A DNA stretch of 64,000 nt from IMG/VR virus record IMGVR_UViG_3300008954_003475, positions 124,001 to 188,000 of that record; one strand, given 5' to 3'. Both the position numbers and the translations under genes were made by a program. Below, in pieces: positions 1,795 to 64,000 of this stretch. Under the pieces are notes generated by a model. It ran no database searches and was not told where the DNA came from. It was given only the letters and a program-made list of their open reading frames with translations. Numbering within the stretch: the first letter of the stretch is position 1; every line of letters begins with the position of its first letter.

Positions 1795-2094
1795 TTATAA
1801 CCTTATCATTAGCTCGCTTAAAACAATATTTATAAAATATGGATCTTTTCCATTCAAAATATTCTTAACAAGACTAAGACTGACCCCTATAGCGGCCCCT
1901 CCCGGAGACTTCTTGCCTGCAATCTCCATTACATTAAACTCTTCTAATTTTTTTGAAACATTACTATACGACCTTACTCGGGCCTCAGGGGACATGCTGC
2001 TTATCATAATCTTTATTATACTATGCAGCTGTTCCGCTACATAAGTAGGGTTTTGTTCAAGCAATTGCGCTTCTTTCTCTAATCTACTTGACAT
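1795..2094 (-). CDS. hypothetical protein, probably virion-associated
   Basis: 99-aa ORF overlapping the upstream gene; begins MSSRLEKEAQ (K-x-A). Confidence 0.6.
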   Translation of the reverse strand: MSSRLEKEAQLLEQNPTYVAEQLHSIIKIMISSMSPEARVRSYSNVSKKLEEFNVMEIAGKKSPGGAAIGVSLSLVKNILNGKDPYFINIVLSELMIRL

Positions 2095-2638
2095 ACTCTT
2101 TAACCCTTGAAACGCTTCCTTGGTAAGCCTTTCTTCTTGCCGTTGCCTCGTTTTCTTCTAAATTATTATATAACTTTAATAATTTATTAAACTCAAGAGT
2201 AGCTTCGATCAATATATCATCTTTGTCCAAAACATCAGAATCTACAATCTTTACTAGCAAATCTCTAAATAATGCAGAATAATCTATATTTTTTTGCACT
2301 GCTATCTTTTTTATTAAAAAGTCTGCAAAATTTGCCAAAGCAACATCCTCTTCTTTGTCCATTTCGTCTGCCATAGCAATCATCATTTGCATTAAATCAT
2401 CATAATCTAATTGTTTTATTCTTTTTCTTTTTATTTTCTCCGTAAAAAACGGCCTCTCCTCTTCCTCTGTGTGCGTAGGGGGCATAACAGGCTCTCCGGG
2501 GGCTGCAAAACCCCTTCCTATGCCTACGCCCGGGTTTCCAGTCAAACCCTCCTCTGCCTCTGTCACGCTTGGAAGATCACAGGATTTAACCTTTGGTTTT
2601 AACCTTAGCCTTTTATTTCTATAAGATATCTTCTTCAT
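2084..2638 (-). CDS. hypothetical protein carrying the shared LA..LD..G...A...D motif
   Basis: 184-aa ORF containing MIAMADEMDKEEDVALANFADFLIKKIA. Confidence 0.65.
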   Translation of the reverse strand: MKKISYRNKRLRLKPKVKSCDLPSVTEAEEGLTGNPGVGIGRGFAAPGEPVMPPTHTEEEERPFFTEKIKRKRIKQLDYDDLMQMMIAMADEMDKEEDVALANFADFLIKKIAVQKNIDYSALFRDLLVKIVDSDVLDKDDILIEATLEFNKLLKLYNNLEENEATARRKAYQGSVSRVKEYVK

Positions 2639-2648
2639 CTTTCAAAAC

Positions 2649-4310
2649 CTACTTAAGCCCGCGCTTAACTTTTCCAAAGTCAGAAGACACAACCCTATCC
2701 GATAAAGACTTGCCTTTTCTCTTTTTTACCTTAAACTTGTTTCCCTTAGAATCCCTCAACCTTCCCCCTCCAAGAACTAAATCTGCAGGAGTAAAAGCAA
2801 CCGCCTCTCCACTTGGAGAGACAGTTTCATACAAAGGAGTCGTTGATGATGCACTTGAAAGCTTTACTAGATCATCAAATGTTGTATCATTATTTGCCAT
2901 AATGCTTATATCTTCATTAACAGTTCTTATATTCATTAATTTAACCAAATCTGAAGCTTTTGCAGTTTCTTGCAAAATAGCTGAAGGATTAAAATAAATA
3001 GTAAGCTTTGCTCCTTCTGATGTATTTTCTGATGAAACATTTGTTATAAACTTTGGAAGATCTGTACTTATATCTTTTAATGTTTTTATTTTATTATTTT
3101 TCATAAAATATAAAAAATAATCCATATCTTTGCCAACCGGCTTTACATATCTCGCCATTGGTCCGGTCAAAACCAAGCTAACAACCGGAATATTTGTAGG
3201 ATCTAACAATCGCCTGTTTATCACTATCTCTCCTGGGTTTGCGCCAACACTAGATCCGCCCCCAGGCCTTACCCTGCTAATCTCAATCCCTTTAACAACC
3301 TCATTAAATGAAGGCAGCTTCGCTTCTCCGCCACCCCCCTCCTGCACGCTCTTGCCAGACTCTGTTGCCCCCGACTTATTCTCATCCGAACCTGCATCTC
3401 TAACAGACTCTGCAGAACCACCTCTGTCAAGGCCTTTAACGAGTTGCCACCAATCATCTATGGCCCGATAAAGCCCGCCAAGCTGCACGATGTCATCTGA
3501 TTGACCTCCGGCCGTGAAATCACTATCGTTATTGACGCCTTCAATACTAACCTGACCCTCTTGTGCTTGCTTGTTCATACTGGTAGAAGAAAATCTTGCA
3601 CCGACACCTTCGTAGTCAATGCTTGAACCAGCACCAACCTTCTCTTTAAAAGAGACTATAGCATCAAATTTTGACCTAAGCAATGGTATTAACTTATTCA
3701 AGATAAGCTTATGAGGACTCTCTCCGGGGGCTAATCCTAAAAAATCTGTCGTTCTAGCTGATTCGTCCAAACTTTTATATTCTATTGCTAAAGATTTCGT
3801 TTCTGATGTATTATTTGTTATATTTTTCGAAATAGAAGTATTTTTAACAAGATTCATAAATGCTTCAAAATTATCACTATAAAGACTTTTAGATGGCTGT
3901 ATTATATATTGTTGAAATGCTCGCTTAGAATTTTCATTTACCTTATTATTGTCAAACTCCATAGTAGATTCGGTTTTAACTCGCCTTTCCAAAAGCCGAC
4001 CCGTCGATCCGGTCATTAGAGCCAGGCCTCTAAAAATTCCACTAATGATAGATCCCTCTATTCCGCTGTATGATGCAAAGTCTTTGCGAATACCTTTTTC
4101 AATACCTTTATCTACAGCTTTTAAGGCCGCTGTCATTAATCGTCCATCAATATCAAACTGCTCTGCCCCAGAACCTTTACCTCCCGGGGCAGAGTTAGCA
4201 GGCTGCGCTGGTGGCGCTCCTGACTCATTCTCTATATTTATAGACTCATCACTGGTGTCTACACTTACACCTTCGCCCATGTCTATTCCTCTTTTTGTAA
4301 AATTACTCAT
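2649..4310 (-). CDS. hypothetical protein downstream of the portal gene (probable head/internal protein)
   Basis: Start reassigned to ATG 4310 (MSNFTKRG; AGGTG upstream; no overlap with portal). 553 aa with Gly/Ser-rich linkers and a basic C-terminus. Confidence 0.65.
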   Translation of the reverse strand: MSNFTKRGIDMGEGVSVDTSDESINIENESGAPPAQPANSAPGGKGSGAEQFDIDGRLMTAALKAVDKGIEKGIRKDFASYSGIEGSIISGIFRGLALMTGSTGRLLERRVKTESTMEFDNNKVNENSKRAFQQYIIQPSKSLYSDNFEAFMNLVKNTSISKNITNNTSETKSLAIEYKSLDESARTTDFLGLAPGESPHKLILNKLIPLLRSKFDAIVSFKEKVGAGSSIDYEGVGARFSSTSMNKQAQEGQVSIEGVNNDSDFTAGGQSDDIVQLGGLYRAIDDWWQLVKGLDRGGSAESVRDAGSDENKSGATESGKSVQEGGGGEAKLPSFNEVVKGIEISRVRPGGGSSVGANPGEIVINRRLLDPTNIPVVSLVLTGPMARYVKPVGKDMDYFLYFMKNNKIKTLKDISTDLPKFITNVSSENTSEGAKLTIYFNPSAILQETAKASDLVKLMNIRTVNEDISIMANNDTTFDDLVKLSSASSTTPLYETVSPSGEAVAFTPADLVLGGGRLRDSKGNKFKVKKRKGKSLSDRVVSSDFGKVKRGLK

Positions 4311-4317
4311 AAAGCAC

Positions 4318-6018
4318 CTACAACTCTCCACCTGGAGGCTCGCCACCGGGTGGAGGTGGAGCGCCACCGCCCATGTCTCCGCCGCCCGGCGGAACCCCAG
4401 GAAGCCCCTCGCCCCCGGCTGGAGCCGCGCCAAGTCCTTCGGGAGGCTCTGATATCACCTTGCCTGGGTCCAGTCCTAACAACTCTGACAACTTCATATT
4501 GCCCAATACTTGTTGCTCTTTGGCAAAAATCTGTTCATCAATCATTTCTTCTCGTATTCTTCTGCGCTCATCCTCATATCCAAGCCCAAGGCTTCTATGC
4601 AGAGTCTGTAGCGATACCTGCTTATTTCCAACAAACTGTCCGATTGCTGTAATAAAATCAGCCATATCATATAGGTTCATATGATTAAAGTCAATCGATG
4701 GAACCAACAACCTTTTCTCTCCATCTTTATATTCGAAAAAATCTTGAAGTTCACATATTGGTGCAAAGATCTTTCTCTCAAGCCACTTCTTCATCATGTT
4801 TCTAAATATGTCATACCTTTGCCTAAGAACCTCAAGCCCAACAGAGGAGCTTGCGTATGTGGCAGCCTCTTGGTCCATCAAGGCCTTTGGAGTCATAAGG
4901 CCTGCATATAAGTTGTTTATTATAAGCTCAACATCTGTTCCAATCTCTAAAACACCTCCGGAAAAACCATTTCGTTCAATTTTAACACCGTTATGTGTTA
5001 CGATTTTAAAGTCCTTGTCATACTGAGCCTCTTCTAATAGGTCTTTAAACGCCTCTATATCAGCCTGTGTTGGCCTGTAATCACCCTCACCGCCTAGCGT
5101 GACCAGGGTAAGAGGGTTGACCATTCCATCGGCCTGTGCGAACTTGCTTTCTCTTAATTTATCATAAAGCATTAGATCTTTATAAACAGATACTATGACA
5201 GAGGTTCCTCTAACATCATATGGCGAACTTAATAATTTAAGATGTGATATATTAAATGCATCTAATGGAATATTTTGACCTCTTCTAACATAATCTACAA
5301 TATGTTTTGGAATATACTTTCTAAGAGATAAATCAGCAGGAGATGTTGAATTTATAATTCTTTGCAAATTTGCATCTGGCCTAAGGGATACAAGGGTATG
5401 GTTTCCTATTACAGACTTCTTTACGTGTACATAATCTGGATTTAATATAGTTATCCTACTCCATGTTCCAAGACTCTCATCTAACTCCGCATAAGGAAAT
5501 GCTTCACCCATCTTCCAAAACTCTAAAGCCGCACCATAAACAACGGAATACAAGTCAATTTTTTCTGCCATCTCCATAAAAAATTGCTGTACTCTTTTGT
5601 TTTTGCATGTAATATTTATCTTGCTTATCGGATACGAAGCATGAAGATTGATAGCGTTTCTAACAATTGGGTGTGTATCATAAAAAACACGATTCCATGC
5701 ATTCATGGTTACGCGATCACGCGGTAAGTTTAGATTCGCTAATTGAAATAATGGAGAATAAATCTCTGGCGACATCCTGTCTGTTGTAGAGGATGTCGAA
5801 GGTCCCGCCATAGGGGACGCTACAGAGGCGTTCTTTAGAAAGTTTAAACTATTTTTTCTGAACCCAGGGCTGTGTGCAACACTTCCGTAAATTTTAACTT
5901 CAGATTGTGCATCAAGCTGCTTATTCGCAGCATCTGTAATTTGCGCACGCCTAACCTCAGAGATAGAGTCGGCTGCCTTTTTTGAAATTTGTGTTGGCGG
6001 TCTGTTAATCCTTCTCAT
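4318..6018 (-). CDS. portal protein
   Basis: 566 aa directly downstream of terminase; segments FYDTHPIVRNAINLHASYP, GEAFPY, ILNPDYV and RGTSVI resemble large-phage portals; Pro/Gly-rich C-terminal tail. Confidence 0.8.
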   Translation of the reverse strand: MRRINRPPTQISKKAADSISEVRRAQITDAANKQLDAQSEVKIYGSVAHSPGFRKNSLNFLKNASVASPMAGPSTSSTTDRMSPEIYSPLFQLANLNLPRDRVTMNAWNRVFYDTHPIVRNAINLHASYPISKINITCKNKRVQQFFMEMAEKIDLYSVVYGAALEFWKMGEAFPYAELDESLGTWSRITILNPDYVHVKKSVIGNHTLVSLRPDANLQRIINSTSPADLSLRKYIPKHIVDYVRRGQNIPLDAFNISHLKLLSSPYDVRGTSVIVSVYKDLMLYDKLRESKFAQADGMVNPLTLVTLGGEGDYRPTQADIEAFKDLLEEAQYDKDFKIVTHNGVKIERNGFSGGVLEIGTDVELIINNLYAGLMTPKALMDQEAATYASSSVGLEVLRQRYDIFRNMMKKWLERKIFAPICELQDFFEYKDGEKRLLVPSIDFNHMNLYDMADFITAIGQFVGNKQVSLQTLHRSLGLGYEDERRRIREEMIDEQIFAKEQQVLGNMKLSELLGLDPGKVISEPPEGLGAAPAGGEGLPGVPPGGGDMGGGAPPPPGGEPPGGEL

Positions 6019-6021
6019 ATT

Positions 6022-7794
6022 CTATACTCTCCTTGTAACCTTAGCCAATGTAGATCTTAAATAATTTGATTGTCTCTCTAAACCAGGTTTAATAGTAAAA
6101 CCCTTCGTAAGATCAAACTTATATGCCATATAAGCATACATGAGGGCCATCAGTCCATCATTTGGCGCTGATCCTTTTACAAAAGTCTTTATTGGTTGGC
6201 CCCCAGTTATTCTGACCTTTGACTCCATAGATGTGCAATGATCTATTAGCCACTCTACATGCTCATAGCTCTTCCATGGAAATCTTATTTTACCCTTTCT
6301 AAACAAATCAAACAGTTCGTCAATTAAAAGATCTTTATTATAAGAAATTATTAATTCATCCTCTCTGTATTTCATAGGCTTTATCAAACTTCCGCTTCCT
6401 TGTGCTCCAAGAAATCTTTCTCTATAAAGAGACTGAAGATCTCCAACCACATCTTGGCCAAAAAACCAATCAGATACGCCGCGTTGAACGCCAAAGCGTC
6501 TATACATCTCTTTTATTGTATCTTTTTTGAAAGAGAAATTATTTTTACGCAACTTATGAGCATGCTCTATCGACAACGCCCCGTCTGGTTGCGCTGATAA
6601 TACAACAACGCACGAATAAGACTGACCACCTTTAGAGTTGGGATCGTCCTCTTTGCCTCCCCAATCAACCCCCAGGTAAACAGCCTTATCTCTTGGGTTA
6701 ATTTTTTTAGCAAAGCTTCTGTCTGGATCTCTACACTTGTCATAAATCTCCGCCTTAGTAAGAGGTGATCCTGCGCCAGAGTAAAACTCTCCAACTACTT
6801 CATTTTTCCAAATCCTTTCTGTTTGAGCCGGATTATTTTCCGGCATTAATTTTTCAATATTTTCTTTTGTAAAATAAGGAATATATAACTGATTTATATG
6901 AAAACCTACAAATTCGCAATTATCTGGATCAGCAGAACCAACCCACTTACCTCGCTCAGTTGCCTCAACCTTCTTCTGCTTGGTTCCACACAGAGGACAC
7001 TGAATTATATTTTCATGCAACCAAATAGACTTCCATCTATCATCTTCTGGCAAATAAAAGGGATACGTTTCTCCGCAATTTATGCACCCCAAATGATAAT
7101 ATCGTTGATCTGACATATCCCAAATGGTAGAAAAATAACTACCCCTTTGTTTCGGGGTTCCAAAGAAAACTTGAACACCCTGGCCGGTGGGGCCATACTT
7201 TGCCGCTGTTAAAATCTTTGTAGCATTTCCAATGGCATGACCAAACATATCCTGAACTTCGTCAAAAAAGACTATATCCGCTGTCATACCACGAATTCTA
7301 TCACCATCTGTGCCCAAACTGTCTATCCATAAAGTACCTTTATTAAATTGCTTCATGGTTAAATTGTCAACAGAGTTTGAGCTAATTAATTTATTTTTAT
7401 TTATAAAATCATTCTTAGCCGTTCTGATTAATGTTTCAAGCTTATCTTGTGAAAACTTCTTCACCTGCCCGAGGGCCGGAAAAAGGTGAACAACTCTAAT
7501 ATTCGGCTTATCAAACAGGCCGCTATTCGTAAAAAACAAATCAAGAGCGCCAGCCATAACGGTTGCACCAACCTGACGGCCCTTCTTTATAACAACTGGC
7601 TTTCCATCTTTTCTTGTTGCTTGCAAAGCAATATACCGATATATATCGGCCATAAACTTCCACCCATTATCAAGAACTCTAAACTCTGCTCCGTCTAAAG
7701 TTAGATTATTTTGAACAAAGTGTGCTGGGTCGAAGTCTAAGAAGCTTTCTTTGAGTTGTTCAAAAAGTTTTTCTTGACTTTGTTTCTTTGACAT
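6022..7794 (-). CDS. terL: terminase large subunit (GpA-like)
   Basis: Walker A-like KKGRQVGAT, Walker B VFFDEV, coupling motif GTP, Zn ribbon CINC...CPLC, nuclease motif LGVDWG, C-terminal NDGLMAL. Confidence 0.9.
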   Translation of the reverse strand: MSKKQSQEKLFEQLKESFLDFDPAHFVQNNLTLDGAEFRVLDNGWKFMADIYRYIALQATRKDGKPVVIKKGRQVGATVMAGALDLFFTNSGLFDKPNIRVVHLFPALGQVKKFSQDKLETLIRTAKNDFINKNKLISSNSVDNLTMKQFNKGTLWIDSLGTDGDRIRGMTADIVFFDEVQDMFGHAIGNATKILTAAKYGPTGQGVQVFFGTPKQRGSYFSTIWDMSDQRYYHLGCINCGETYPFYLPEDDRWKSIWLHENIIQCPLCGTKQKKVEATERGKWVGSADPDNCEFVGFHINQLYIPYFTKENIEKLMPENNPAQTERIWKNEVVGEFYSGAGSPLTKAEIYDKCRDPDRSFAKKINPRDKAVYLGVDWGGKEDDPNSKGGQSYSCVVVLSAQPDGALSIEHAHKLRKNNFSFKKDTIKEMYRRFGVQRGVSDWFFGQDVVGDLQSLYRERFLGAQGSGSLIKPMKYREDELIISYNKDLLIDELFDLFRKGKIRFPWKSYEHVEWLIDHCTSMESKVRITGGQPIKTFVKGSAPNDGLMALMYAYMAYKFDLTKGFTIKPGLERQSNYLRSTLAKVTRRV

Positions 7795-8384
7795 TATGGT
7801 CCGGTTTGAGCATGATTCATGTAATCTGCAGTGTCATCATCAAATGATGATGGCATATCTGCCTCAGATACATATTCTACTATTTCCGGACCTTTTTTGT
7901 GTTTATTTAAGAGCTTTTCAACTATAGCTTTAAACTTGCCATTGTCAAGCTTTCCTTCTATTCTATCATATCCAAGATTTGGATGTTCGCGACAATGAGT
8001 AATAACTGTTCCATAATTTGCATCTGGACGATCTTCTGCAAAATCTTTAATATATTTTAAGATATTTCTAAGGGCATCAACATTGTTGCCACGTTCTTTT
8101 TTTGTCTTACATGGGCCACAACCGCCAGTACAGCCACCGCCGCAACCTGCCTCTTTTATATTCTCTTCCGTATTGGTATTTACACTTTTAACAAGATCAA
8201 ATCCTGCACGAGCCTTTAGGTCTGCCATCTTCTCTTCGATTGTATCAAAATCTTTCCTCTTCTTCATAATAGAACGAAGATTGCTGAGATAATCAGCATT
8301 CTTTTCTAAATTATTGGCAAAGTCATTAACCCAACTAACCGTTGTGCTATATTCTTCACTTAAATTTTGTCTTTTTACTTTCAT
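7794..8384 (-). CDS. hypothetical protein with a Cys/Gly cluster
   Basis: 196 aa with GCGGGCTGGCGPC; stop overlaps the terL start. Confidence 0.65.
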   Translation of the reverse strand: MKVKRQNLSEEYSTTVSWVNDFANNLEKNADYLSNLRSIMKKRKDFDTIEEKMADLKARAGFDLVKSVNTNTEENIKEAGCGGGCTGGCGPCKTKKERGNNVDALRNILKYIKDFAEDRPDANYGTVITHCREHPNLGYDRIEGKLDNGKFKAIVEKLLNKHKKGPEIVEYVSEADMPSSFDDDTADYMNHAQTGP

Positions 8385-8416
8385 TAAATTGACCTTTAAA
8401 TTTGCTAACCCTTTAC

Positions 8417-8920
8417 TTACTCAGAAAGTATACCAGTTACACCGCTAGGAAGATCTGTTGCTCCGCCGGCCATATCCAACCACTTTGACCATTCTCCGCC
8501 TGTTGCCAACGGCGCTGTTTGTCCGGGAGCTGAAAGAATATCTTCAAAGCCAGGAAGCTTTAACTTTCCGCTCATAAGCATTTCTAACAAAATGCCTTTA
8601 AACTCTTCATTTGCCAAAAGAAGATTCATAACACTACTTTTTTGTTTAGTATCCAAAGCTATAACCGCATCTGCCAATTTTTCTGGAGACATATGCTCTG
8701 CAATATCTGCCAGCTTTCCCGCACCAACGGTATCAGCCACACCGCCAAGGCGTTCTGGATCCCAGTTTTTAACCACATTTTCAGCCATCCGAGTTTTTGC
8801 ATCTTCAAAAAGACCCTCTTTCTTTTCAGCAGCCTTAATAATCCTGTCTACAAGATCCGCCTCCTTAAGAAGCCCCTTGCTATCCAAACTATTCGCCAAA
8901 TTTACCAAATCTTTTAACAT
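8417..8920 (-). CDS. hypothetical protein with the shared motif at its N-terminus
   Basis: Begins MLKDLVNLANSLDSKGLLKEADLVDRIIKAA; GGAGG RBS. Confidence 0.7.
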   Translation of the reverse strand: MLKDLVNLANSLDSKGLLKEADLVDRIIKAAEKKEGLFEDAKTRMAENVVKNWDPERLGGVADTVGAGKLADIAEHMSPEKLADAVIALDTKQKSSVMNLLLANEEFKGILLEMLMSGKLKLPGFEDILSAPGQTAPLATGGEWSKWLDMAGGATDLPSGVTGILSE

Positions 8921-8929
8921 CTCATCCTC

Positions 8930-9973
8930 CTAGGCAAAGTAATTTCTCAAAAAATCAACGCCGGCCTTGCCCTCGCCCTTCTTGGCGTCATCGCCGGTAT
9001 CATTTGGGGAAAATGTTCCACGATCCTTAAAGATATGAAACCCACTATCCATACATAGCTGCATTATTGCAAGCTCTTCTCTGTCATCAATAGAGTACTT
9101 ATTAGACAAAAAGCCATAAACATCTTCCATCGAATGGCCGCCTGATACATGTGCATTAATCATAATTCCAGAAATAGCCCGCTCAAAGGGAGATACTGCT
9201 ATAACTATATTATTCGGAGTAGCGGCCTCCTTTGTAAGCTCACCGTATTCAATCTCTCTGCCAGAAGCATTGATCCACTTCGGAATGCCATTGGCACCTA
9301 CAGAGGCTTTCTTGTCATGCTCGTCTTTCACCATCTTCTTCAGCTTTCCAATATGTTTCTTGAGAACTAATACGTCCTTCATTATATTTACCCGAACACC
9401 CTCTAGGGCTTGAATGTCTAATACATTATCTGAATCTTCACGAATAGCTCTTGAGATTTGAGAATTCAACTTATCCAAGAAGCTTGTAGCTCGCTCGCAG
9501 CCGACCATGCTTCTTCCGTCATGCTGAGGGATGTTTCCAGGATATTGTTCATGAACATATTCCATAAATTTAGACAAGTCTCCATCATCTGCGTAATTGG
9601 TCTCTTGCTCATCTTCATCCTCGTCTAGTTCTTCAGATCTCAATTGTGAGCCGGGAACTAAATCAGATAAAGAAACATCTCCATGCTCCTCTAAGAATTC
9701 AGTTATATCCTTATCTAACCCCTCCATCTCGCCGCCGAGTTCTCCAAGGCTGCCTTCCCCCTCTGTAAAGGGCTCAAGGACATCCTCAAGGGTTCCGTCA
9801 CCTAAATCATCTGTTCCCACGGCAGAAGCCATGCCCGCCCCGAAGATTTCCTCTTCAGACAGGCCTTCAAACATATCGTCTTCTGCATAACCAGTAAGAT
9901 CGCCTTCCACGTAAGATGTTTGATCTAATTCAGATTCTTTAAAAATTGTTGTTGTCTTAAAATTATTAGCCAT
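8930..9973 (-). CDS. acidic hypothetical protein, head module
   Basis: 347 aa with a very acidic N-terminal half; AGGAG RBS. Confidence 0.7.
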   Translation of the reverse strand: MANNFKTTTIFKESELDQTSYVEGDLTGYAEDDMFEGLSEEEIFGAGMASAVGTDDLGDGTLEDVLEPFTEGEGSLGELGGEMEGLDKDITEFLEEHGDVSLSDLVPGSQLRSEELDEDEDEQETNYADDGDLSKFMEYVHEQYPGNIPQHDGRSMVGCERATSFLDKLNSQISRAIREDSDNVLDIQALEGVRVNIMKDVLVLKKHIGKLKKMVKDEHDKKASVGANGIPKWINASGREIEYGELTKEAATPNNIVIAVSPFERAISGIMINAHVSGGHSMEDVYGFLSNKYSIDDREELAIMQLCMDSGFHIFKDRGTFSPNDTGDDAKKGEGKAGVDFLRNYFA

Positions 9974-9981
9974 TTTTTCTC

Positions 9982-10416
9982 CTATCCTACTAAGCTATAA
10001 AGTCCGTAATATACGTTTCTACTTTCATTATTATCAGAATAATAATCTAACGGATAACCATACTGAGCCTCTGGCATATTTCCTATCATAATATGCGGGT
10101 ACAAAGGACTGCCATTTAACCCAACATTACCTGCAGGAATAGTAGATTGCTTTGAGTCATACTTGCAGTCAACAGAGTCCTTCTCTTCGAAAATCATGTC
10201 TGCAAAAGGGCACTTCGAATACTCTTCGACCATAAGCATTATTTCCAAATTATTATCCGCAATCTCTCTAGCGTCTTCTTTGTTATCAGCAGCTTCCAAC
10301 GGAGTCATGCTAAGAATAGCTGATTTTTTCGAATCTTTTGCCACTCCACCAGCTATTTTGCATCCTGCAGCAACAGGCAGGCCGAATGGGCATCTGGTCG
10401 TTTTTCCTCTAATCAT
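9982..10416 (-). CDS. hypothetical Cys-containing protein
   Basis: 144 aa; CPFGL..C and CPFA..C suggest a metal site. Confidence 0.6.
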   Translation of the reverse strand: MIRGKTTRCPFGLPVAAGCKIAGGVAKDSKKSAILSMTPLEAADNKEDAREIADNNLEIMLMVEEYSKCPFADMIFEEKDSVDCKYDSKQSTIPAGNVGLNGSPLYPHIMIGNMPEAQYGYPLDYYSDNNESRNVYYGLYSLVG

Positions 10417-10457
10417 AATTAATTATATCCTACTAAATGAAGAAAGTATTAGTAAGT

Positions 10458-11363
10458 CTAAATATTCAATGATTTTAATTTATATTCTGTTAAATTAATT
10501 GCATCATCTAAATATTTATTAACCAACTTTCTTTTAATAACCTCTTCTTTGAAAACGCCAACCAACGGTACGGTTGGAAGCAGCTTCATCTCAGACAAAT
10601 AATGCATTGTTATATCTGAATTATCATTAATTGATTCTGCAATTATTGAAGTAAGGAAAGCCTCTTTTAAAGCCCACTTATTTTCTCCAGTAAAACTTTC
10701 TCTATTATTTCTTGCAAAATCAATAATTTCATCATCAATAGAAAACTCATAACGAGCAGCAAAATTGATGGCTCTATAAATACGCCTAATATCATCACCA
10801 AGAGCAATTCTTGCAGGAACATTTGTTCTTATAATCTTTGCTTCTAAGTCTTCTTTGCCTTTGTTTGTAAAGTCAATAATTTCATCATCAAAAAATCTTT
10901 TATGTAAAGTATTTATTGTAAACTCTCTACTGTAAACTTCAAATAATTTTTCATCTTTAATATTTAGCTCTTTCATTATATACTCAACAACATCATCAGA
11001 TATAAAATTGCTTGAAAAATCAAACATTATATCATCTAAATAAACAGAAACATGTCCATCGCTGAAAAGCTTAAAGTTACTATTTAATTCATTAGCCAAA
11101 GTTATAGCCAACCTTGTTATATCGGCATCATTAGTTGTTATATCTATATCTCTATAATCTTCAACAGGAGCATTTCCGCCTTCCATCTGAAGAACCTGAA
11201 GCCTTCGGCTAACGCGACCCCTTGCCTCAAAAGCCCTCTCTTGCGCCTCTCCTATTCTGTTTAAATACAAAACCCTAGGAACTCCACCAACTATGTACGG
11301 TTCCGCTATATAGTTTTCTTTACAAATTTTTAATATTTTTGAATATATATCATCAAAATTCAT
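10458..11363 (-). CDS. tRNA nucleotidyltransferase / poly(A) polymerase family (class II CCA-adding-like), divergent
   Basis: YIVGGVPR, DIDITT (catalytic DxD), REFTINTL, DFTNKGKEDL, DDIRRIYRAINFAARY. Confidence 0.85.
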   Translation of the reverse strand: MNFDDIYSKILKICKENYIAEPYIVGGVPRVLYLNRIGEAQERAFEARGRVSRRLQVLQMEGGNAPVEDYRDIDITTNDADITRLAITLANELNSNFKLFSDGHVSVYLDDIMFDFSSNFISDDVVEYIMKELNIKDEKLFEVYSREFTINTLHKRFFDDEIIDFTNKGKEDLEAKIIRTNVPARIALGDDIRRIYRAINFAARYEFSIDDEIIDFARNNRESFTGENKWALKEAFLTSIIAESINDNSDITMHYLSEMKLLPTVPLVGVFKEEVIKRKLVNKYLDDAINLTEYKLKSLNI

Positions 11364-11388
11364 TAGAGCCCCTATTGTTTATAACTCT

Positions 11389-12936
11389 TTATACGGGCGG
11401 CCCTAAATCATCCGCTTCCGGCACCTGTTCCGCCTCAGGCGCAGGCTCTGCCACAGCCTCCTCTTCGGCCCCTGGAATCCCGCTTTGAGCATCGGCCATA
11501 GTCTTTGCGTTAGCAAGTTGTCCCATCATCTTTGTAACCCTTGTAAGAGCGTAAGAGAATGAGTCAATCAATTTGCTTTGTGACTCTGCAAGCTCTGGAA
11601 ACATAGATGCAATACCTATTTTGTCCAGCATAATATCAAACTCGGCTAATTGGCGAATAATACGCCTATCCGCAAGCATTCCCGCCACCTCGTCAAGCTT
11701 TCTGGCAGCATCTTCAACGCTTATATCTCCAGCCAACTCATCGTACTCCCCGGGTCTCGCCCCAGGAAGTGGGGTTATGTCTTCAAAGCTAGCCGCCTCT
11801 ACATCATCAGACTTTGGAATTCCATCCATAGGACCAGGAGGAGACTCCTCTTCTGCCGGGGCTTCACCCAAAGCTTCTGCCGGGGCTTCACCCAAAGCTT
11901 CTGCCGGGGCTTCACCCAAAGCTTCTGCCGGGGCTTCTGCCGGCATCTCTTCAGGAACTTCTTGAGCAATTTTCTTTAAAATTTCCGCACCTTCAGTGCA
12001 GCCAAACTTATTAAGCTTATTTGCAGTATTGTGAGTTACGTCAGATAGTGTACTGCTAAGCTTTAACATTTGAACTTGAAGACTTAAATGCATAAGATGT
12101 TCCGCAAGAGTCTTATAGGTCTCCGAATCCATATACTCATCTGTTCTCAAAAGCTTATCTATACGTCGTATTGCCGTATGAAGCTTTGACTTCCAAGAGC
12201 CAAATCGCTCACCGCGATGAGCCTTTCGCTCTGAGGCTTCTGCCGTCTCATCAAAAACAGATCCGTGAAAACTATCTCCCGGCATATTATTACCCTGACC
12301 TTTGTTTAAATATGCGCTTTGTCCTCCATGATAATACGGAGTTCCGCCTTGACCAAGGTTACTCATGTAAACAGATTCTTTTTTCATGTACTCATCCTCT
12401 TTTGAACTATATTTTAAATGCTCACCAGTGCTATAATATTTAAACCACTTTATAAACTTCAAATCTTCATCGCTATCTATATCTAAAAAATTACTATAAT
12501 AATCTAATGCATTTTGTTTTGTCATTTCATTTTTTGCTACAGAATCATAAATCAAATGAACTGTTTTTAGCCATCTATTTATATCAAATTCATCTTCTAT
12601 ATTTTCTCTATAATAATCAACATTAGGATATGCAATCTTTATTATCTTTTTATCTTTAGTTTTGCAACGAACAACGCTATAGTAAGCATCATTTAAATTA
12701 TTAATGTTTAACTTCAATAATTCTTTCTTTTCTTCTAAAGAAAGAACTATATTTAACTCTTTTGCTGCCTTTTTTATAAAAAAATGCCTTTCAAACTTTT
12801 TGTTACTATCAACACCCAAAGCAGTTAGGTGGACAGACTTCTCTGCAAGTTTATCAAACGCAGGCGTACTAGACGAAACAGGCATAGCTGCCAACTTTTT
12901 TATAAAAAAGTCATTTATTTCGTCTAGATTGCTCAT
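11389..12936 (-). CDS. hypothetical protein (possible scaffold/internal head protein) with EAPAEALG repeats
   Basis: 515 aa with several K-x-A sites, a motif variant TANKLNKFGCTEGAEILKKIAQ and a helical acidic C-terminus. Confidence 0.7.
   Translation of the reverse strand: MSNLDEINDFFIKKLAAMPVSSSTPAFDKLAEKSVHLTALGVDSNKKFERHFFIKKAAKELNIVLSLEEKKELLKLNINNLNDAYYSVVRCKTKDKKIIKIAYPNVDYYRENIEDEFDINRWLKTVHLIYDSVAKNEMTKQNALDYYSNFLDIDSDEDLKFIKWFKYYSTGEHLKYSSKEDEYMKKESVYMSNLGQGGTPYYHGGQSAYLNKGQGNNMPGDSFHGSVFDETAEASERKAHRGERFGSWKSKLHTAIRRIDKLLRTDEYMDSETYKTLAEHLMHLSLQVQMLKLSSTLSDVTHNTANKLNKFGCTEGAEILKKIAQEVPEEMPAEAPAEALGEAPAEALGEAPAEALGEAPAEEESPPGPMDGIPKSDDVEAASFEDITPLPGARPGEYDELAGDISVEDAARKLDEVAGMLADRRIIRQLAEFDIMLDKIGIASMFPELAESQSKLIDSFSYALTRVTKMMGQLANAKTMADAQSGIPGAEEEAVAEPAPEAEQVPEADDLGPPV
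11850..11937. repeat. 24-bp coding tandem repeat, about 3.7 copies
   Basis: cttctgccggggcttcacccaaag at 11850, 11874 and 11898 plus a partial copy; encodes EAPAEALG. Confidence 0.95.
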
Positions 12937-13175
12937 CTTTCCTCTATTCTTTTAACCAAGCCATCAATTTGGTCGAACCATTCCCTCTTCTCTTCTACTC
13001 TCTGCTCTTTTGTATTATATTTAATATATTCTAAAAATGTCTTCAAATGATTATCGGAAATCTTTTCGTCATCTGGATAAAGACTAAGATTATCTTTTAG
13101 CCATTCCTCTAAGGAAATTAAGCTATTAAGATTATCTAAGTTAAGAACTTTATATACCTTTCCGTTAAGTAACAT
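12933..13175 (-). CDS. hypothetical protein
   Basis: 80-aa ORF overlapping both neighbours. Confidence 0.6.
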   Translation of the reverse strand: MLLNGKVYKVLNLDNLNSLISLEEWLKDNLSLYPDDEKISDNHLKTFLEYIKYNTKEQRVEEKREWFDQIDGLVKRIEER

Positions 13176-13851
13176 CTATAACTTCTCCGTGTATTTTGTC
13201 CAAATCCGAACCATCCAATTGTCTCATTTTTACATCCAGCCTATCTACAAAAACAGATACAAGATCTGGGTTTAATTCTTGCAACACATCCAACACGGCC
13301 TCCTTCAAAACTCTGGCTTGTTCATTTACTACACTAATATTAATATTATGCTCAATCTTTTTATCTGCAACGCCTTCAATATACTTCTTCCAATCCTGCA
13401 TAAGGGCTTTCATGGTATTGATATATTCAATAAAAATCTTGTCTTCCCTGAGAGAGCCTCCTTCTTGTAACATATTATAATAGTATTCTATTCTTGAATT
13501 TATAAGACTATCCATTTCAAGAAGCCTTCTTGTTACATCCAATTCAGATGAGGCAATCTCTTCAAGCTTTTGCTGATACGATGACGAAGCCTTTATGATC
13601 ATTCTGGCCTCAGCCTCTGACGCCTCTCTGTCTATCTCTCCTCTTCTGTTTTTGATATCATCTAAAACTTCGCCTTTAATATTTAAATGCTCTGCTCTAA
13701 ACTTTTGAAGAGTCATGTATGAAATATGCAGACGCCTTGTTCTTGGATATTTCTCTTTAAGCCAACGCTCAACCTCTTTAACAGAATCACCCTCTAACAG
13801 CTTGCTTATAACTAATTCTTTATCCGGATGATTTAAAATTTTCTTGCTCAT
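13165..13851 (-). CDS. putative terminase small subunit / HTH DNA-binding protein
   Basis: N-terminal helical HTH-like region (ILNHPDKELVISKLLEGDSVKEVERWL..ISYMTL), central coiled coil, C-terminal beta-like KKIEHNINISV; lies in the packaging module. Function inferred. Confidence 0.45.
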   Translation of the reverse strand: MSKKILNHPDKELVISKLLEGDSVKEVERWLKEKYPRTRRLHISYMTLQKFRAEHLNIKGEVLDDIKNRRGEIDREASEAEARMIIKASSSYQQKLEEIASSELDVTRRLLEMDSLINSRIEYYYNMLQEGGSLREDKIFIEYINTMKALMQDWKKYIEGVADKKIEHNINISVVNEQARVLKEAVLDVLQELNPDLVSVFVDRLDVKMRQLDGSDLDKIHGEVIDVT

Positions 13852-13860
13852 GTTTACCTC

Positions 13861-13899
13861 AAAATAAAAAGTCCTAGCTTTATATTACTAAGCCAGGAC
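13861..13899 (-). terminator. rho-independent terminator
   Basis: Minus strand GTCCTGGCTT-AGTAATATA-AAGCTAGGAC followed by TTTTTATTTT. Confidence 0.7.
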
Positions 13900-13923
13900 C
13901 TCTCTCTGTATTTTTAATATAAG

Positions 13924-14061
13924 TTATTTAGATAAATGCTCTTCTACCTGTTTTAAGCTCCACATCTTTGTCATACCATGACGACTCATCGCCTCAATCG
14001 TTTCCATGCCTAATATGCCATCTACTTCTAGAGATTCGTTCATTATTTTATTCAACTTGCT
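13924..14061 (-). pseudogene. in-frame peptidoglycan-binding-domain extension beyond the TAA of the 14062-15162 gene
   Basis: Reads GDSGNVMKL*SKLNKIMNESLEVDGILGMETIEAM...HLSK*; the stop sits where PG_binding_1 has LQ. Confidence 0.65.
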
Positions 14062-15162
14062 TTAAAGCTTCATAACATTGCCTGAGTCACCCCAGTCAGA
14101 GTGAAACATGCCCGCATTCTTTCTTAAAAGCACATCTAGATATGTAGCCTCTTTTGTCAGGCCTTTTCTGTCCAAATGTGTTGCAAGCTTGATGAGATTA
14201 TTGATTGCCTCAGAGGAGAAAGAGCTCATGCTCCCCATTCCGTCTACAATTGCCGCCTCTTCCTCGCTCAAATTGCCGTTAGTCATTTGCGCAAGCCTGC
14301 TTGAGTCTAGCTTATAATCCGAAGATGGATCCTCATGAGCCTTTAATAGTGCTGCAACCTCACCTGTGGTGAGCGGGCGATTCTCCCTGTCCTTAGCTTC
14401 GGCATCAGAAGGCTCATCGGCACCCGGCTCATGAACAATCGCATGCCCAGTGTCCAGTCCAAGCTTTTCTCTTACCCATGGGTCAGACTTATCAAGGCCT
14501 CTCATGCTTTTCTGAACCTCCTCTGTAGGAAGATCATCCGGCCCAAGGCCGGCCTCCTCCATCTTCATCTGCATTAAAGTCATTATCTCTTGTGTTGACA
14601 AAGCGTCGGCTGGATCTGGACCAGAATAAGTAAAGGCAGAATTCTTTCTTAAAAGCACGTCTAGATATGTAGCCTCTTTTTTCAGGCCCTTTCTGTCTAA
14701 ATGTGTTGCAAGATGCATTATACTTGTTTGAAGCGCCGCATGACCAGGAGGGAAGTCTCTTCCGTCCTCTGTCTTAAAGCCTTCGTTGTAATCATAAATC
14801 TTATTTGTATAAGGATCTTGAAATACACCATCAGACACTCTCTTCGCCTGCACGCCCACACGATCTGGCGAATAGCGAGTAGACAAATGTGTGGCTACAT
14901 ACTCCGTTGGCACATAAGAATCCTCATGCTCTGGACCAATGCCATACAGGCCCTCTCTGTCCCTTGAGACTGGATCTCCACCTCTTTGGGCTAGATATCT
15001 ATCACGGGTTGCATACTCAGCTACATTGGATTGAAAGTGCTGAAAAGCCCCATGTTGATCTCCAAGAGCAAACTTCTCAAGAGTTTCTAATCTACTCTCT
15101 TTGCCATCTTCCAATGCCAACTTTTCAATATACTCTAATCTGTTCTCTCTATCTTTAATCAT
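14062..15162 (-). CDS. hypothetical virion-type protein with two copies of the shared motif
   Basis: 366 aa; LATHLDRKGL.KEATYLDVLLRKN occurs twice; HLSTRYSPDRVG region. Confidence 0.75.
   Translation of the reverse strand: MIKDRENRLEYIEKLALEDGKESRLETLEKFALGDQHGAFQHFQSNVAEYATRDRYLAQRGGDPVSRDREGLYGIGPEHEDSYVPTEYVATHLSTRYSPDRVGVQAKRVSDGVFQDPYTNKIYDYNEGFKTEDGRDFPPGHAALQTSIMHLATHLDRKGLKKEATYLDVLLRKNSAFTYSGPDPADALSTQEIMTLMQMKMEEAGLGPDDLPTEEVQKSMRGLDKSDPWVREKLGLDTGHAIVHEPGADEPSDAEAKDRENRPLTTGEVAALLKAHEDPSSDYKLDSSRLAQMTNGNLSEEEAAIVDGMGSMSSFSSEAINNLIKLATHLDRKGLTKEATYLDVLLRKNAGMFHSDWGDSGNVMKL
14116..14712. repeat. 72-bp intragenic direct repeat (14116-14187 and 14641-14712)
   Basis: The two copies differ at 4 positions and encode the shared motif. 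Confidence 0.9.
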
Positions 15163-59622: not shown

Positions 59623-60354
59623 CTATCGTCCAGCGGTGATTCTTCGTTCAAATTGACGAGAAATCCAGTTATTTTTAACATTTCTATTTGCAACAAGCAT
59701 TGGCAAATAATCAAGAGGAATCTTCTCTAACAACAAAGAGAATGGCCCTCGGGCAATTTCTTTTGTGAATCCCTTTAGCTTGCTGTAATAATAAGGCGCT
59801 CTTGCAAGACCTTCGTATCTAATGTCTGCAATCTTATCGTCTAACATTTCATCTAGACACTCAACGGGGCCTAACCTATTGTAGTAAATCTTTCTAACCT
59901 TCTTACACTTATGCCCCTTCAACTTTCTAAGAGCTTTAATGCTACAAAAGGTTACAGCCATCACCTGACTATCGCCACTTCCATTTATTGCAACTTCATC
60001 AATAAGTGAAATATCTGTATAAAGACCCTTTTGTATTACCAAGGACTTTGCCAAGTCTACATCAGATTCCTTTAGAATCTTATCCCCTATCTCTACATGC
60101 ATTGGAAGCATGTAGGCTAGAACCTTTTGAGCCATCCAATAACCACGATTCCAACTTCTAGTGCGATCTGAGTCTGCAAAGACAATCTCAAAAAGATTTG
60201 AATCTAAACAAACTTTTTCTAAGTCACTCTTTTTCACAGAAGAGCAAACAGCTTGCATCTTCTCATCCAAATCTGACCATGAAGCTGACGCAGAAAGCTC
60301 TTCAAGATCATTAGCAAGTTTCTTCAAACTAGGACTCATTTTTGTTTGACTCAT
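59623..60354 (-). CDS. hypothetical helical-repeat-like protein
   Basis: 243-aa ORF with HEAT-like segments (CKKVRKIYYNRL, DKIADIRYEGL). Confidence 0.65.
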   Translation of the reverse strand: MSQTKMSPSLKKLANDLEELSASASWSDLDEKMQAVCSSVKKSDLEKVCLDSNLFEIVFADSDRTRSWNRGYWMAQKVLAYMLPMHVEIGDKILKESDVDLAKSLVIQKGLYTDISLIDEVAINGSGDSQVMAVTFCSIKALRKLKGHKCKKVRKIYYNRLGPVECLDEMLDDKIADIRYEGLARAPYYYSKLKGFTKEIARGPFSLLLEKIPLDYLPMLVANRNVKNNWISRQFERRITAGR

Positions 60355-62855: not shown

Positions 62856-64000
62856 TTATAGCCTACGACTTGTACGACTTGGCGGATATCCTGCTGCGGC
62901 TCTTTCTCGCGGAGTCATTCTTCTCCACTCTCTTTTTTGCTCCCTAGTCATATTATCCCAGTCTCTTCTTTGACCTCTTCTTGCCTCTTCTCTAAGATAT
63001 CGCCGTTGTCTACGAGTTGTAGTACCTGAATCTCTAAGGTTGTTATTCACAGCAGATCTCTCTCTATCTGAAAAAGAACTTCTCTGCTCCGGAATAAGCT
63101 GGCGTCTATAAGTAATAGGGATCCACAGCTTTGCGTCTACTGCTGCATTTCCAATCGGAGGTTTCGGATCTGTTGTATTTTTCTTTTTATTGGTAAAGAA
63201 AAATACAGGAATCATTCTATTCTCTGCTGTATCATGAAATGCCCCTACGGAGCCATCCCTATCTCCGTTTGTCTTACCTTTAATCTCCGCTGCAGGATAG
63301 CCTCTAAAGCTACCACTCTGTCCCGCTTGTCCTGTCTGCCCTGCGCCACCAGACTCAGGCGTAAAGGTTGAAAGGGCAATGCTGAAAGCACTTCCTGTAT
63401 TGTCGTTATCATAAGCTGTTCTGACAGCAGCTTTGTTTGCGCCTCTTCCCAATACTGCAGTTGCAGTTGCTTTATCTAGAGGAAGATCTAATCCTGTTCC
63501 GTCAAATAATTTCGTTCTGGCCTCAAGAGGAAAGGACTCTGTTGCGGGGAACATGAGATAGCTTTCAAGCATCCTATCTCCATCTGTACCCTGTATCCCT
63601 CCGGTGTCCAGCCTTCCTGATAACATCCGTAAAGCTTCTTCTGCTGTTTCCGGAAGAGCACCCTTATCTGCTTTGGCCCAAGCCTGTTTAGATTTAGGTC
63701 CAAAATACCCATCGGGTACCAAATCTTTATCGCTATCATCTTTATACCCAAGCTCTTTAAGCTTCTCCTGAACAGCCTCTGCTGCATCTGATTTAAACAG
63801 CTTACCATCTTTCTTAAAAGGAGTAGCGGCCTGTGCAGCTTGTTGCTGACCGCCTTGCTGATCGCCTTGCTGATCGCCTTGCTGATCGCCTTGCTCCGAA
63901 CTTCTACTGCTTAAGTGATGCCAGTCTCCAGGCCCGTCAGTCTTTTCATAAACAGCAGATGCCGCCGTGGAGCTCCAACTCCCTTTAGGTAACTTTTTCC
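62856..64000 (-). CDS. peptidoglycan-binding-domain protein with an Arg-rich tail (5' end outside the window)
   Basis: The frame stays open upstream of the track start to 63998: ...VQEKLKELGY......LVPDGYFGPKSKQAW; C-terminus RRQRRYLREEARRGQRR. Confidence 0.7.
   Translation of the reverse strand, partial: KKLPKGSWSSTAASAVYEKTDGPGDWHHLSSRSSEQGDQQGDQQGDQQGGQQQAAQAATPFKKDGKLFKSDAAEAVQEKLKELGYKDDSDKDLVPDGYFGPKSKQAWAKADKGALPETAEEALRMLSGRLDTGGIQGTDGDRMLESYLMFPATESFPLEARTKLFDGTGLDLPLDKATATAVLGRGANKAAVRTAYDNDNTGSAFSIALSTFTPESGGAGQTGQAGQSGSFRGYPAAEIKGKTNGDRDGSVGAFHDTAENRMIPVFFFTNKKKNTTDPKPPIGNAAVDAKLWIPITYRRQLIPEQRSSFSDRERSAVNNNLRDSGTTTRRQRRYLREEARRGQRRDWDNMTREQKREWRRMTPRERAAAGYPPSRTSRRL
63843..63895. 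repeat. 12-bp coding tandem repeat
   Basis: cgccttgctgat x3 plus partial copies; encodes QQGD. Confidence 0.9.

What the first reader, a model, noticed from the sequence alone, without database searches (positions are those of the whole stretch)
2084..15162. A roughly 27-aa helical motif ending in K-x-[A/S] is shared by unrelated head-module proteins: candidate capsid-targeting signal
Seen: LVNLANSLDSKGLLKEADLVDRIIKAA (N-terminus of 8417-8920), HLATHLDRKGLKKEATYLDVLLRKNS and KLATHLDRKGLTKEATYLDVLLRKNA (14062-15162), MIAMADEMDKEEDVALANFADFLIKKIA (2084-2638) and a variant TANKLNKFGCTEGAEILKKIAQ (11389-12936). The rest of these proteins looks unrelated. Known: T4 internal proteins use a short capsid-targeting sequence that the prohead protease removes. 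Inference: this is a portable docking tag that recruits varied cargo into the prohead and is then cleaved off.
Basis: partly seen in the sequence, partly recalled or inferred. Interest (0 to 1): 0.75.

Follow-up and report, generated by a model that had tools for sequence, protein, structure and literature searches.

The report
Portable helical-hairpin tag of marine jumbo phages
A 31-residue helix-turn-helix "label" that no searched database or paper describes is attached to more than two thousand otherwise unrelated protein clusters, in one group of uncultured marine giant phages; it most likely docks these proteins to a shared partner, perhaps the assembling virus particle, but that partner is not yet known.

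Summary
The motif is real and far from chance. A profile built from the copies scores 36-62 bits on eight places in the 222-kb genome; the next best six-frame match is about 6 bits.

- Three are strong: window 8417-8920 (one) and 14062-15162 (two).
- One (2084-2638) is a remote homolog by profile-profile comparison (probability 92.7%, P 4e-7).
- One (11389-12936) is not significant.

More copies lie outside the window.

The motif folds as a helical hairpin (AlphaFold2 pLDDT 93) and is under selection at the peptide level. It sits on proteins that share nothing else: 5 of 528 pairs are similar outside it.

It occurs in 2,086 protein clusters from metagenomes, mostly at the exact N-terminus and often in tandem arrays of small variable genes. 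Every contig examined belongs to one clade of marine jumbo phages. It is absent from Pfam, PHROGs, the PDB, 50,697 GenBank phage records and 185,579 prokaryote genomes.

The "portable tag" idea is well supported. Capsid targeting is plausible by analogy with the capsid-targeting signals of T4 and P1, but it is not shown. Removal by the protease is not supported as a general rule: a third of copies are internal or C-terminal, and no consistent cleavage site follows the tag.

The parts
8822..8920 (-). Tag copy, subtype A, at the exact N-terminus (residues 1-33) of the 167-aa protein 8417-8920, two genes upstream of the large terminase
   Evidence: 52-57 bits with profiles built from the copies. 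hhalign P 1e-17. Coordinates checked.
14635..14733 (-). Tag copy 1, internal (residues 144-176), of the conserved 366-aa protein 14062-15162
   Evidence: 47-70 bits. In G002 the gene is split: the N-domain ORF keeps only a degenerate remnant at this position, and a separate ORF starting with a good tag follows directly.
14107..14205 (-). Tag copy 2, near the C-terminus (residues 320-352), of the 366-aa protein
   Evidence: 53-69 bits. Homologs carry 2-3 copies.
2288..2395 (-). Degenerate tag-like hairpin (residues 82-117) of the 184-aa head-module protein 2084-2638
   Evidence: HMMER 4.9 bits. hhalign probability 92.7%, P 4.4e-7, 36 columns in register with a 26-member family profile. It is the most conserved block of the family.
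11959..12030 (-). Tag-like block (residues 303-326) of the 515-aa protein 11389-12936; homology to the tag not demonstrated
   Evidence: hhalign P 0.022-0.026. The block ends in KIAQE (KIAQQ in one, KFAQE in another) across six orthologs, and a variable Pro/Glu/Ala linker follows.
62856..64000 (-). C-terminal part of a 502-aa tagged protein. Its divergent N-terminal tag lies just beyond the window end (genome 188266-188364). It is the first of five consecutive tagged genes (genome 186856-193380).
   Evidence: PG_binding_1-like stretch at residues 193-228, E 4.5e-4, below the Pfam cutoff.
6022..7794 (-). Large terminase (context)
   Evidence: PF05876 at 2e-14; phrog_675 at 1e-60.
4318..6018 (-). 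Portal protein (context)
   Evidence: phrog_16240 at 5e-52.

Best explanation
The motif is a self-contained protein module of 31-33 residues: helix, a four-residue turn centred on an invariant glycine, then a second helix. The consensus is M-[IL]-K-E-L-[IV]-K-L-A-N-H-L-D-x-K-G-[LF]-x-K-E-A-D-Y-L-D-x-I-I-K-K-A.

It belongs to one clade of uncultured marine jumbo phages. Their contigs reach 345 kb and their major capsid proteins are 84-89% identical to this one.

Recombination has placed it on thousands of unrelated, mostly small and acidic proteins. It is usually at the exact N-terminus, sometimes internal, C-terminal or in 2-3 copies.

Its exposed polar residues are nearly invariant, and its hydrophobic face is wider than a two-helix hairpin needs for its own core. 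I therefore infer that it docks all these proteins onto one conserved phage-encoded partner.

The most likely purpose is to load them into or onto the assembling virion so that they travel with the DNA. In that case it works like the T4 and P1 capsid-targeting sequences, but as a folded domain rather than a short leader.

Shown: the module, its fold prediction, its portability, its clade restriction and selection on the peptide.
Inferred: that it is a docking module.
Speculative: that the destination is the prohead, and that it is ever cleaved.
For: Motif reality and spread:
- Eight copies score 36-62 bits with the metagenome-wide profile (nine when the divergent 502-aa N-terminal copy, 42-53 bits only with profiles that include it, is counted). 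The genome background is about 6 bits.
- 2,086 clusters of a library of 1.84 billion protein representatives match at E<=1e-3, and 154 at E<=1e-10.
- Related contigs give 8-23 matches each, often in tandem arrays of small genes that each start with the tag.

Fold: AlphaFold2 on 70 tags gives pLDDT 92.8, with helices at 2-14 and 18-35.

Selection on the peptide: pairwise differences are 0.60 at third codon positions against 0.26 at second. Of identical residues, 52% use different codons.

Cargo:
- Unrelated to each other: 5 of 528 pairs are similar outside the tag.
- Almost no Pfam domains.
- More acidic than untagged proteins: median pI 4.9 against 5.6.

Cassette behaviour: the tag is kept and the cargo replaced at a syntenic locus, and a gene is split next to a tag.

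Clade restriction:
- Every tag-bearing contig that includes the head module has this major capsid protein at 84-89% identity.
- No tag in GenBank phages or in 185,579 prokaryote genomes.

Circumstantial points for a virion destination:
- Tagged genes flank the terminase and portal genes.
- A conserved head-module protein carries a degenerate tag as its best-conserved block.
- Some cargo has peptidoglycan-binding-type modules without signal peptides: a PG_binding_1-like stretch and LysM.
- Variable genes sharing only a leader is the pattern of T-even internal proteins (PMC3012670).
- A 30-residue N-terminal signal suffices for capsid targeting in P1 (PMC9024508).
Against: - No virion, expression or binding data exist for any member.
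- The co-folding job gave no answer.
- A third of copies are internal or C-terminal, unlike T4 or P1 leaders.
- Several tagged genes lie next to metabolic or replication genes, not head genes.
- The large arrays of tagged genes sit in regions of many small ORFs, which in other phages are often early regions.
- About 4% of tagged proteins have a membrane-span-like segment, which fits poorly with packaging inside a capsid.
- No common promoter was seen upstream of tagged genes.
Confidence: 0.45

Rival explanations
1. The tag is a docking module for a hub that is not part of the virion. Candidates are a phage chaperone or AAA+ machine (the genome has two GroEL-like genes and a MoxR-like ATPase), a replication or transcription compartment, or a host target. 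The small variable proteins would then be host-takeover or anti-defence factors acting inside the infected cell.
For: - The arrays of tagged small genes lie in regions of many small ORFs.
- Tagged genes lie next to metabolic and replication genes.
- The tag works in any position in a protein.
- There are two chaperonin-like genes and a conserved ATPase.
Against: - No known chaperonin or AAA+ recognition signal is a folded 31-residue hairpin (general knowledge).
- This does not explain the degenerate tag in a head-module protein or the tagged genes beside the terminase.
- It does not explain peptidoglycan-binding-type cargo without signal peptides.
Confidence: 0.22
2. The tag is a self-association module. 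Single hairpins would pair into four-helix bundles, so tagged proteins form mixed oligomers, and proteins with 2-3 tags act as cross-linkers. This could operate inside or outside a capsid.
For: - The hydrophobic faces are wider than a lone hairpin needs (positions 5, 6, 8, 9, 12 and 21, 24, 27, 28, 31).
- Conserved proteins carry 2-3 copies.
- A 190-aa head-module protein has two tandem hairpins of similar pattern, predicted at pLDDT 93-98.
Against:
- The link to the 190-aa protein is weak (hhalign P 2e-4 to 4e-3, HMMER nothing).
- Near-invariant exposed polar residues suggest one specific partner surface rather than generic bundling.
Confidence: 0.15
3. The tag docks accessory proteins on the outside of the virion (capsid surface, neck or tail) as exchangeable decoration or adhesion modules, rather than loading them inside the head.
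For: - Cargo matches include LysM, dockerin-like and EF-hand domains and a PG_binding_1-like stretch, all typical of extracellular proteins.
- The tag is independent of position in the protein.
Against: - The domain matches are few (1-2 of 150 each) and weak.
- Most cargo is short and predicted to be poorly ordered.
- No Ig-like or fibre domains were seen.
Confidence: 0.1
4. The similarity is chance, low complexity, or a remnant of recent gene duplication with no function of its own.
Against: - There is a 30-bit gap between the copies and the background.
- There are 2,086 clusters with nearly invariant polar positions.
- Synonymous codon turnover sits beneath conserved residues.
- The cargo proteins are unrelated.
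Confidence: 0.01

Closest known systems
T4 capsid-targeting sequence (CTS) of the internal proteins IPI-III and Alt (PMC3012670; PMC5694885)
   Same: A conserved leader is shared by a highly diverse set of proteins that have nothing else in common. The genes are variable between related phages. The proposed role is recruitment to the assembling head.
   Different: - The T4 CTS is 10-20 residues, always N-terminal, and removed by the prohead protease after Glu.
- This tag is a 31-residue predicted folded hairpin.
- It is internal or C-terminal in a third of copies.
- It has no consistent cleavage site.
- Its packaging role is untested.
Phage P1 DarB N-terminal packaging signal (PMC9024508)
   Same: About 30 N-terminal residues are sufficient to send a heterologous protein into the capsid, which is the same length class as this tag.
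   Different: The cited paper shows the P1 signal for DarB only. No sequence family is shared across many cargo proteins, and no sequence similarity to this tag was tested here.
P22-type scaffolding-protein coat-binding helix-turn-helix domain (from my own knowledge, not retrieved here)
   Same: A helical hairpin of about 30 residues docks a protein to the inner capsid surface.
   Different: It sits at the C-terminus of one scaffolding protein, not on many cargo proteins. Binding of this tag to the capsid protein could not be shown. No sequence match to any PDB chain.
Encapsulin cargo-loading peptides (from my own knowledge)
   Same: A portable terminal peptide addresses varied cargo to the interior of an HK97-fold shell.
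   Different: Those are short, extended peptides of about 10 residues in cellular nanocompartments. This is a folded hairpin in a tailed phage.
TPR / Sel1-like helical repeat
   Same: A helix-turn-helix unit of about 34 residues with small or hydrophobic residues at similar spacings. Foldseek's top (non-significant) matches for the tandem-hairpin 190-aa protein are TPR proteins.
   Different: No Pfam TPR or Sel1 model matches any tag even at E<=10. Tags are mostly single units, not arrays.

Membership tests
T4-type capsid-targeting sequence / head-protein propeptide | A short leader at the N-terminus, shared by otherwise unrelated proteins | tested here: inconclusive
   120 of 205 copies are N-terminal and the cargo is unrelated. 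But 85 copies are internal or C-terminal, and the module is 31 residues and predicted folded.
T4-type capsid-targeting sequence / head-protein propeptide | Removed by the prohead protease at a consensus site (after Glu in L/I-x-E or A-x-E) | tested here: not met
   [AGS]-x-E ending at tag position 33 occurs in 26 of 160 tags. None occurs within positions 31-45 in 90 of 160. Actual cleavage cannot be tested with these tools.
T4-type capsid-targeting sequence / head-protein propeptide | Necessary and sufficient for incorporation into the prohead | not testable with these tools
   There is no cultured member. It is absent from 50,697 GenBank phage records.
T4-type capsid-targeting sequence / head-protein propeptide | Cargo genes form variable clusters that differ between related phages | tested here: met
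   Tandem arrays occur in G001 at 53-62 kb, in G002 at 151-162 kb and in L006. Cargo is replaced at a syntenic locus.
Scaffolding-protein coat-binding helix-turn-helix | Helix-turn-helix of about 30 residues | tested here: met
   AlphaFold2 pLDDT 92.8, helices at 2-14 and 18-35.
Scaffolding-protein coat-binding helix-turn-helix | Binds the major capsid protein | tested here: inconclusive
   The complex job with capsid protein + 190-aa protein + tag gave no answer (score 0.00; the chains themselves folded poorly).
TPR / Sel1 repeats | Match to the family profile and occurrence in tandem arrays | tested here: not met
   No Pfam match to any of nine tags at E<=10. 101 of 150 proteins have a single copy.
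SAP / HeH / Rho_N helix-extended-loop-helix motifs | Match to the family profile | tested here: not met
   No Pfam match at E<=10. The turn is 3-4 residues, not an extended loop.
Any curated protein family (Pfam, PHROGs, PDB sequences) | Significant profile or sequence match over the tag | tested here: not met
   Searches gave no match over the tag.

The most novel reading that the evidence does not exclude
A cosmopolitan clade of marine jumbo phages uses one folded 31-residue address label to load some thirty different, fast-evolving proteins per genome into the virion for co-injection with the DNA. These would be small acidic proteins, cell-wall-binding proteins and a zinc-peptidase-like protein. 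This would be a natural, modular protein-delivery system, far larger in repertoire than the internal proteins of T4. The label would be related to a hairpin in the phage's own head-assembly proteins.
Probability: 0.3. Interest if true: 0.85.

Novelty: new variant of a known kind. Interest (0 to 1): 0.68.

Why it matters
If the tag is an address label for the virion, it marks the full set of proteins these abundant ocean phages inject. That means over 2,000 uncharacterised protein clusters, likely rich in anti-defence and host-takeover functions, could be read off from sequence alone. It would also give a compact folded tag for packaging foreign proteins into large capsids.

Even if the partner is something else, the tag defines a large undescribed domain family. 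It also makes a clear experiment possible: find what a single conserved 31-residue hairpin binds.

Tried and rejected
- **Pfam, PHROGs and PDB sequence searches** of the tag and of the tagged proteins found nothing over the tag.
- **tblastn of the consensus** against GenBank phages gave no match. A scan of 185,579 prokaryote genomes gave none either.
- **Literature search** for the motif strings found no papers. A search for the genome length returned only irrelevant papers. A search for jumbo-phage N-terminal signals found nothing pertinent.
- **Complex prediction** with major capsid protein + 190-aa head protein + tag gave no answer. The score was 0.00 and the chains themselves were poorly folded. 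This is not evidence either way.
- **ESM Atlas look-ups** gave only unnamed viral clusters.
- **Foldseek** of the 190-aa protein model found no significant match; TPR proteins came at E about 0.4.
- **Homology between the tag and the two C-terminal hairpins of the 190-aa protein** is suggestive in register. hhalign gives P 2e-4 and 2e-3 on the excised repeats, but P 0.004 on the full length, and HMMER finds nothing, so I do not claim it.
- **A shared promoter** upstream of tagged genes was not seen.
- **A common protease site:** the pattern [ILVM][ILVM]-K-x-A-[QSA] occurs 8 times against 2.7 +/- 1.6 in shuffles, mostly in head proteins and tags. It was defined after the fact, and one hit is clearly chance.
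- **Pfam and PDB searches of the protease region** gave no match; only a PHROG match supports it.
Full report
**Setting.** The window is bases 124,001-188,000 of a single 221,878-bp virus contig. Nearly all genes are on the minus strand.

It carries these head and packaging genes:
- a gpA-type large terminase (window 6022-7794) and a portal (4318-6018);
- just below the window, a major capsid protein at genome 113500-114552 (phrog_2522, 1e-69; 46% identical to gp27 of Bacillus phage G over residues 46-348);
- a 1150-aa protein whose residues 126-221 match a head-maturation-protease PHROG (1.4e-11), followed by a long acidic, repeat-rich region.

The contig is a fragment.
- Its first 103.8 kb is 100% identical to the last 103.8 kb of IMG/VR contig G001, which adds about 117 kb.
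- Its first gene is cut at the contig end but complete in G001.
- Capsid-protein homologs sit on contigs up to 345,675 bp.
- A 316-kb contig (G002), estimated 94% complete, is syntenic with it.

**Is the motif there, and is it more than chance?** Yes.
- A profile built from the three clear copies, searched against all six-frame stretches of the genome, found those three at 57-70 bits. It found four further copies outside the window at 11-18 bits.
- After one iteration all seven scored 47-53 bits, and the next stretch scored 6.5 bits.
- Two divergent copies in neighbouring paralogs bring the total to nine.
- With a profile made from 168 metagenomic copies, eight genome copies score 36-62 bits and the background starts at about 6 bits.

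The copy in the 184-aa protein (2084-2638) scores only 4.9 bits with HMMER. I then compared the tag profile with ortholog-pair profiles of about 150 proteins of the genome. It was the best hit after the true copies (P 3.3e-5, all 36 columns in register). With a 26-member family alignment the probability rose to 92.7% and P fell to 4.4e-7. The matching block is the most conserved part of that family.

The block in the 515-aa protein (11389-12936) is not significant (P 0.022). It is conserved in six orthologs and ends in K-I-A-Q-E (one ortholog has KIAQQ, another KFAQE) before a variable linker.

**What the motif is.** AlphaFold2 on an alignment of 70 copies predicts helix 2-14, a turn at 15-17 and helix 18-35, with mean pLDDT 92.8.

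Across 205 copies the following positions are nearly fixed: L5, L8, A9, N10, H11, L12, D13, G16, K19, E20, A21, D22, Y23, L24, D25, K29 and A31. Conservation stops abruptly after position 31.

Two subtypes coexist in one genome.
- Subtype A has K-G-[LF]-x-K-E-A-D-Y-L-D.
- Subtype B has I-G-H-[RG]-D-L-A-D-[KR]-L-D and usually ends K-[ST]-A-Q.

Selection acts on the peptide, not the DNA. Pairwise differences are 0.37, 0.26 and 0.60 at codon positions 1, 2 and 3, and 52% of identical residues use different codons.

No Pfam, PHROG or PDB sequence matches the tag.

**How widespread it is.** The nine-copy profile matched 2,086 clusters (E<=1e-3) among 1.84 billion protein representatives, 154 of them at E<=1e-10.

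In the best 150 proteins most copies are at residues 1-33 and are followed by completely different sequences. The proteins are 40-970 aa long. The copies divide as follows:

| Position of copy | Number (of 205) |
|---|---|
| N-terminal | 120 |
| Internal | 66 |
| C-terminal | 19 |

This list favours multi-copy proteins, because scores add up.

Only about 9 of the 85 non-N-terminal copies begin with Met, so they are real internal copies.

Five IMG/VR contigs of 109-317 kb gave 8-23 matches each, often as runs of adjacent small genes that each begin with the tag. Counting G001's unique part, the complete genome of the present phage would carry about thirty.

Each tag-bearing contig that includes the head module encodes this major capsid protein at 84-89% identity. 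The tag is absent from 50,697 GenBank phage records and from one genome of each of 185,579 prokaryote species. No paper in the searched library contains the motif strings.

**The cargo.**
- Among 33 tagged proteins of three contigs, 5 of 528 pairs share similarity outside the tag, all within one paralog cluster.
- Only 9 Pfam families matched any of the 150 proteins, each in 1-2 members. They include LysM, EF-hand and dockerin-like domains.
- Cargo is more acidic than untagged proteins (median pI 4.9 against 5.6). Six of 150 proteins have a membrane-span-like segment.

Five consecutive genes at genome 186,856-193,380 carry subtype-B or divergent tags. The first of them runs into the window at 62856.
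- Three share a stretch resembling the PG_binding_1 domain. It was matched by Pfam only in the 502-aa protein (E 4.5e-4, below the cutoff) and recognised in the other two by their similarity to it.
- Two end in arginine-rich tails.
- Two share a C-terminal tail.
- One has an H-E-x-x-H zinc-peptidase-like domain in front of an internal tag, and this architecture is conserved in six homologs.

**Modularity.**
- At the locus two genes upstream of the terminase, the G002 protein keeps the tag but has an unrelated remainder.
- The 366-aa protein with two tags corresponds in G002 to two ORFs with overlapping stop and start codons. The first ORF keeps only a degenerate remnant where this genome has its first tag, and the second ORF begins with a good tag.
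- Both observations fit a cassette-like module.

**What it most likely does.** A two-helix hairpin with such a wide hydrophobic face and such fixed polar surface residues is best explained as a docking module for one conserved partner. The partner is probably phage-encoded, because the tag occurs only in this clade.

The best analogy is the capsid-targeting sequence of T-even internal proteins. [quoted passage not shown] A second analogy is the 30-residue N-terminal signal of P1 DarB, which suffices to send a reporter into the capsid (PMC9024508).

Circumstantial support for a virion destination:
- tagged genes sit beside the terminase and portal genes;
- a conserved head-module protein has a degenerate tag as its core;
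- cell-wall-binding-type cargo lacks signal peptides.

Points against, or neutral:
- there are no direct data;
- internal and C-terminal copies exist;
- some tagged genes lie among metabolic and replication genes, and the arrays sit in small-ORF regions;
- a few cargo proteins have membrane-span-like segments;
- the co-folding job gave no answer.

I put virion targeting at about 0.45.

**Cleavage.**
- Giant-phage and T4 prohead proteases cut after Glu in A-x-E or L/I-x-E (PMC5694885).
- Here an [AGS]-x-E ending exactly at tag position 33 is enriched (26 of 160 tags, against 2.2% per position in cargo). But 90 of 160 tags have none within 15 residues.
- K-x-A-Q(-E/D) recurs at domain boundaries in five unrelated families, including the protease/scaffold-like protein and the 190-aa head protein. 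The capsid protein has an invariant I-V-K-Y-A-S at residues 23-28.
- These are hints found after the fact. General removal of the tag is not supported.

**Verdict.** The portable-tag reading is well supported. The capsid destination is plausible but unproven, and the cleavage step is doubtful.

The tag is an undescribed domain family confined to an abundant group of ocean jumbo phages.

Noticed in passing
window 61186-62223 (-) and 60329-61186 (-): The first gene matches phrog_1211, annotated '2-aminooxy adenylosuccinate synthetase' (3e-66). I take this to be PurZ-like. It sits next to a DHH phosphoesterase (phrog_4771, 6e-84). Together they may be a 2-aminoadenine (Z-base) DNA pathway.
   Followed up: no
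window 20082-21737 (-) and L001 12654-14258 (-) (genome 198654-200258): There are two GroEL-like chaperonin genes in one phage genome, of 551 and 534 aa. They were recognised from the sequence only.
   Followed up: no
whole contig G000; G001 119.5-223.4 kb: The window's contig is incomplete. Its first 103.8 kb is identical to the end of IMG/VR contig G001, which adds about 117 kb including the main array of tagged genes. Capsid homologs lie on contigs up to 345,675 bp, so the real genome is probably 330-345 kb.
   Followed up: partly
L001 6427-7380 (-) (genome 192427-193380): This 317-aa protein has an H-E-x-x-H plus downstream G-G-E-G-x-A-E zinc-peptidase-like domain in front of an internal tag. 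The architecture is conserved in six metagenomic homologs. Its N-terminus reads M-x-x-K-x-A-Q-P, like the end of a subtype-B tag.
   Followed up: partly
L029 13208-13780 (-) (genome 119208-119780): This 190-aa head-module protein has 65 homologs. It has a conserved 30-residue N-terminus ending K-x-A-Q, an acidic variable linker and a C-terminal three-helix domain predicted at pLDDT 93-98. That domain is made of two hairpins whose pattern resembles the tag. It is possibly a core or scaffold protein.
   Followed up: partly
L029 17472-19739 (-) (genome 123472-125739; its last 1739 bases are window 1-1739): A 755-aa head-module protein has a DUF192 domain (PF02643, 2.8e-18) at residues 242-339 and matches PDB 3m7a.
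   Followed up: no
genome 42017-98016 and window 28230-34595: There is a series of giant ORFs of 3319, 2738, 2121, 1970, 1777 and 1533 aa, conserved with G002. Their function was not examined.
   Followed up: no
window 10458-11363 (-): A tRNA-nucleotidyltransferase-like gene (phrog_2244, 6e-11) lies among the genes upstream of the terminase.
   Followed up: no
L029 7500-8552 (-) (genome 113500-114552): Similarity of the major capsid protein to Bacillus phage G gp27 starts only at residue 46. The first 45 residues are conserved within the marine clade and may be a propeptide.
   Followed up: no
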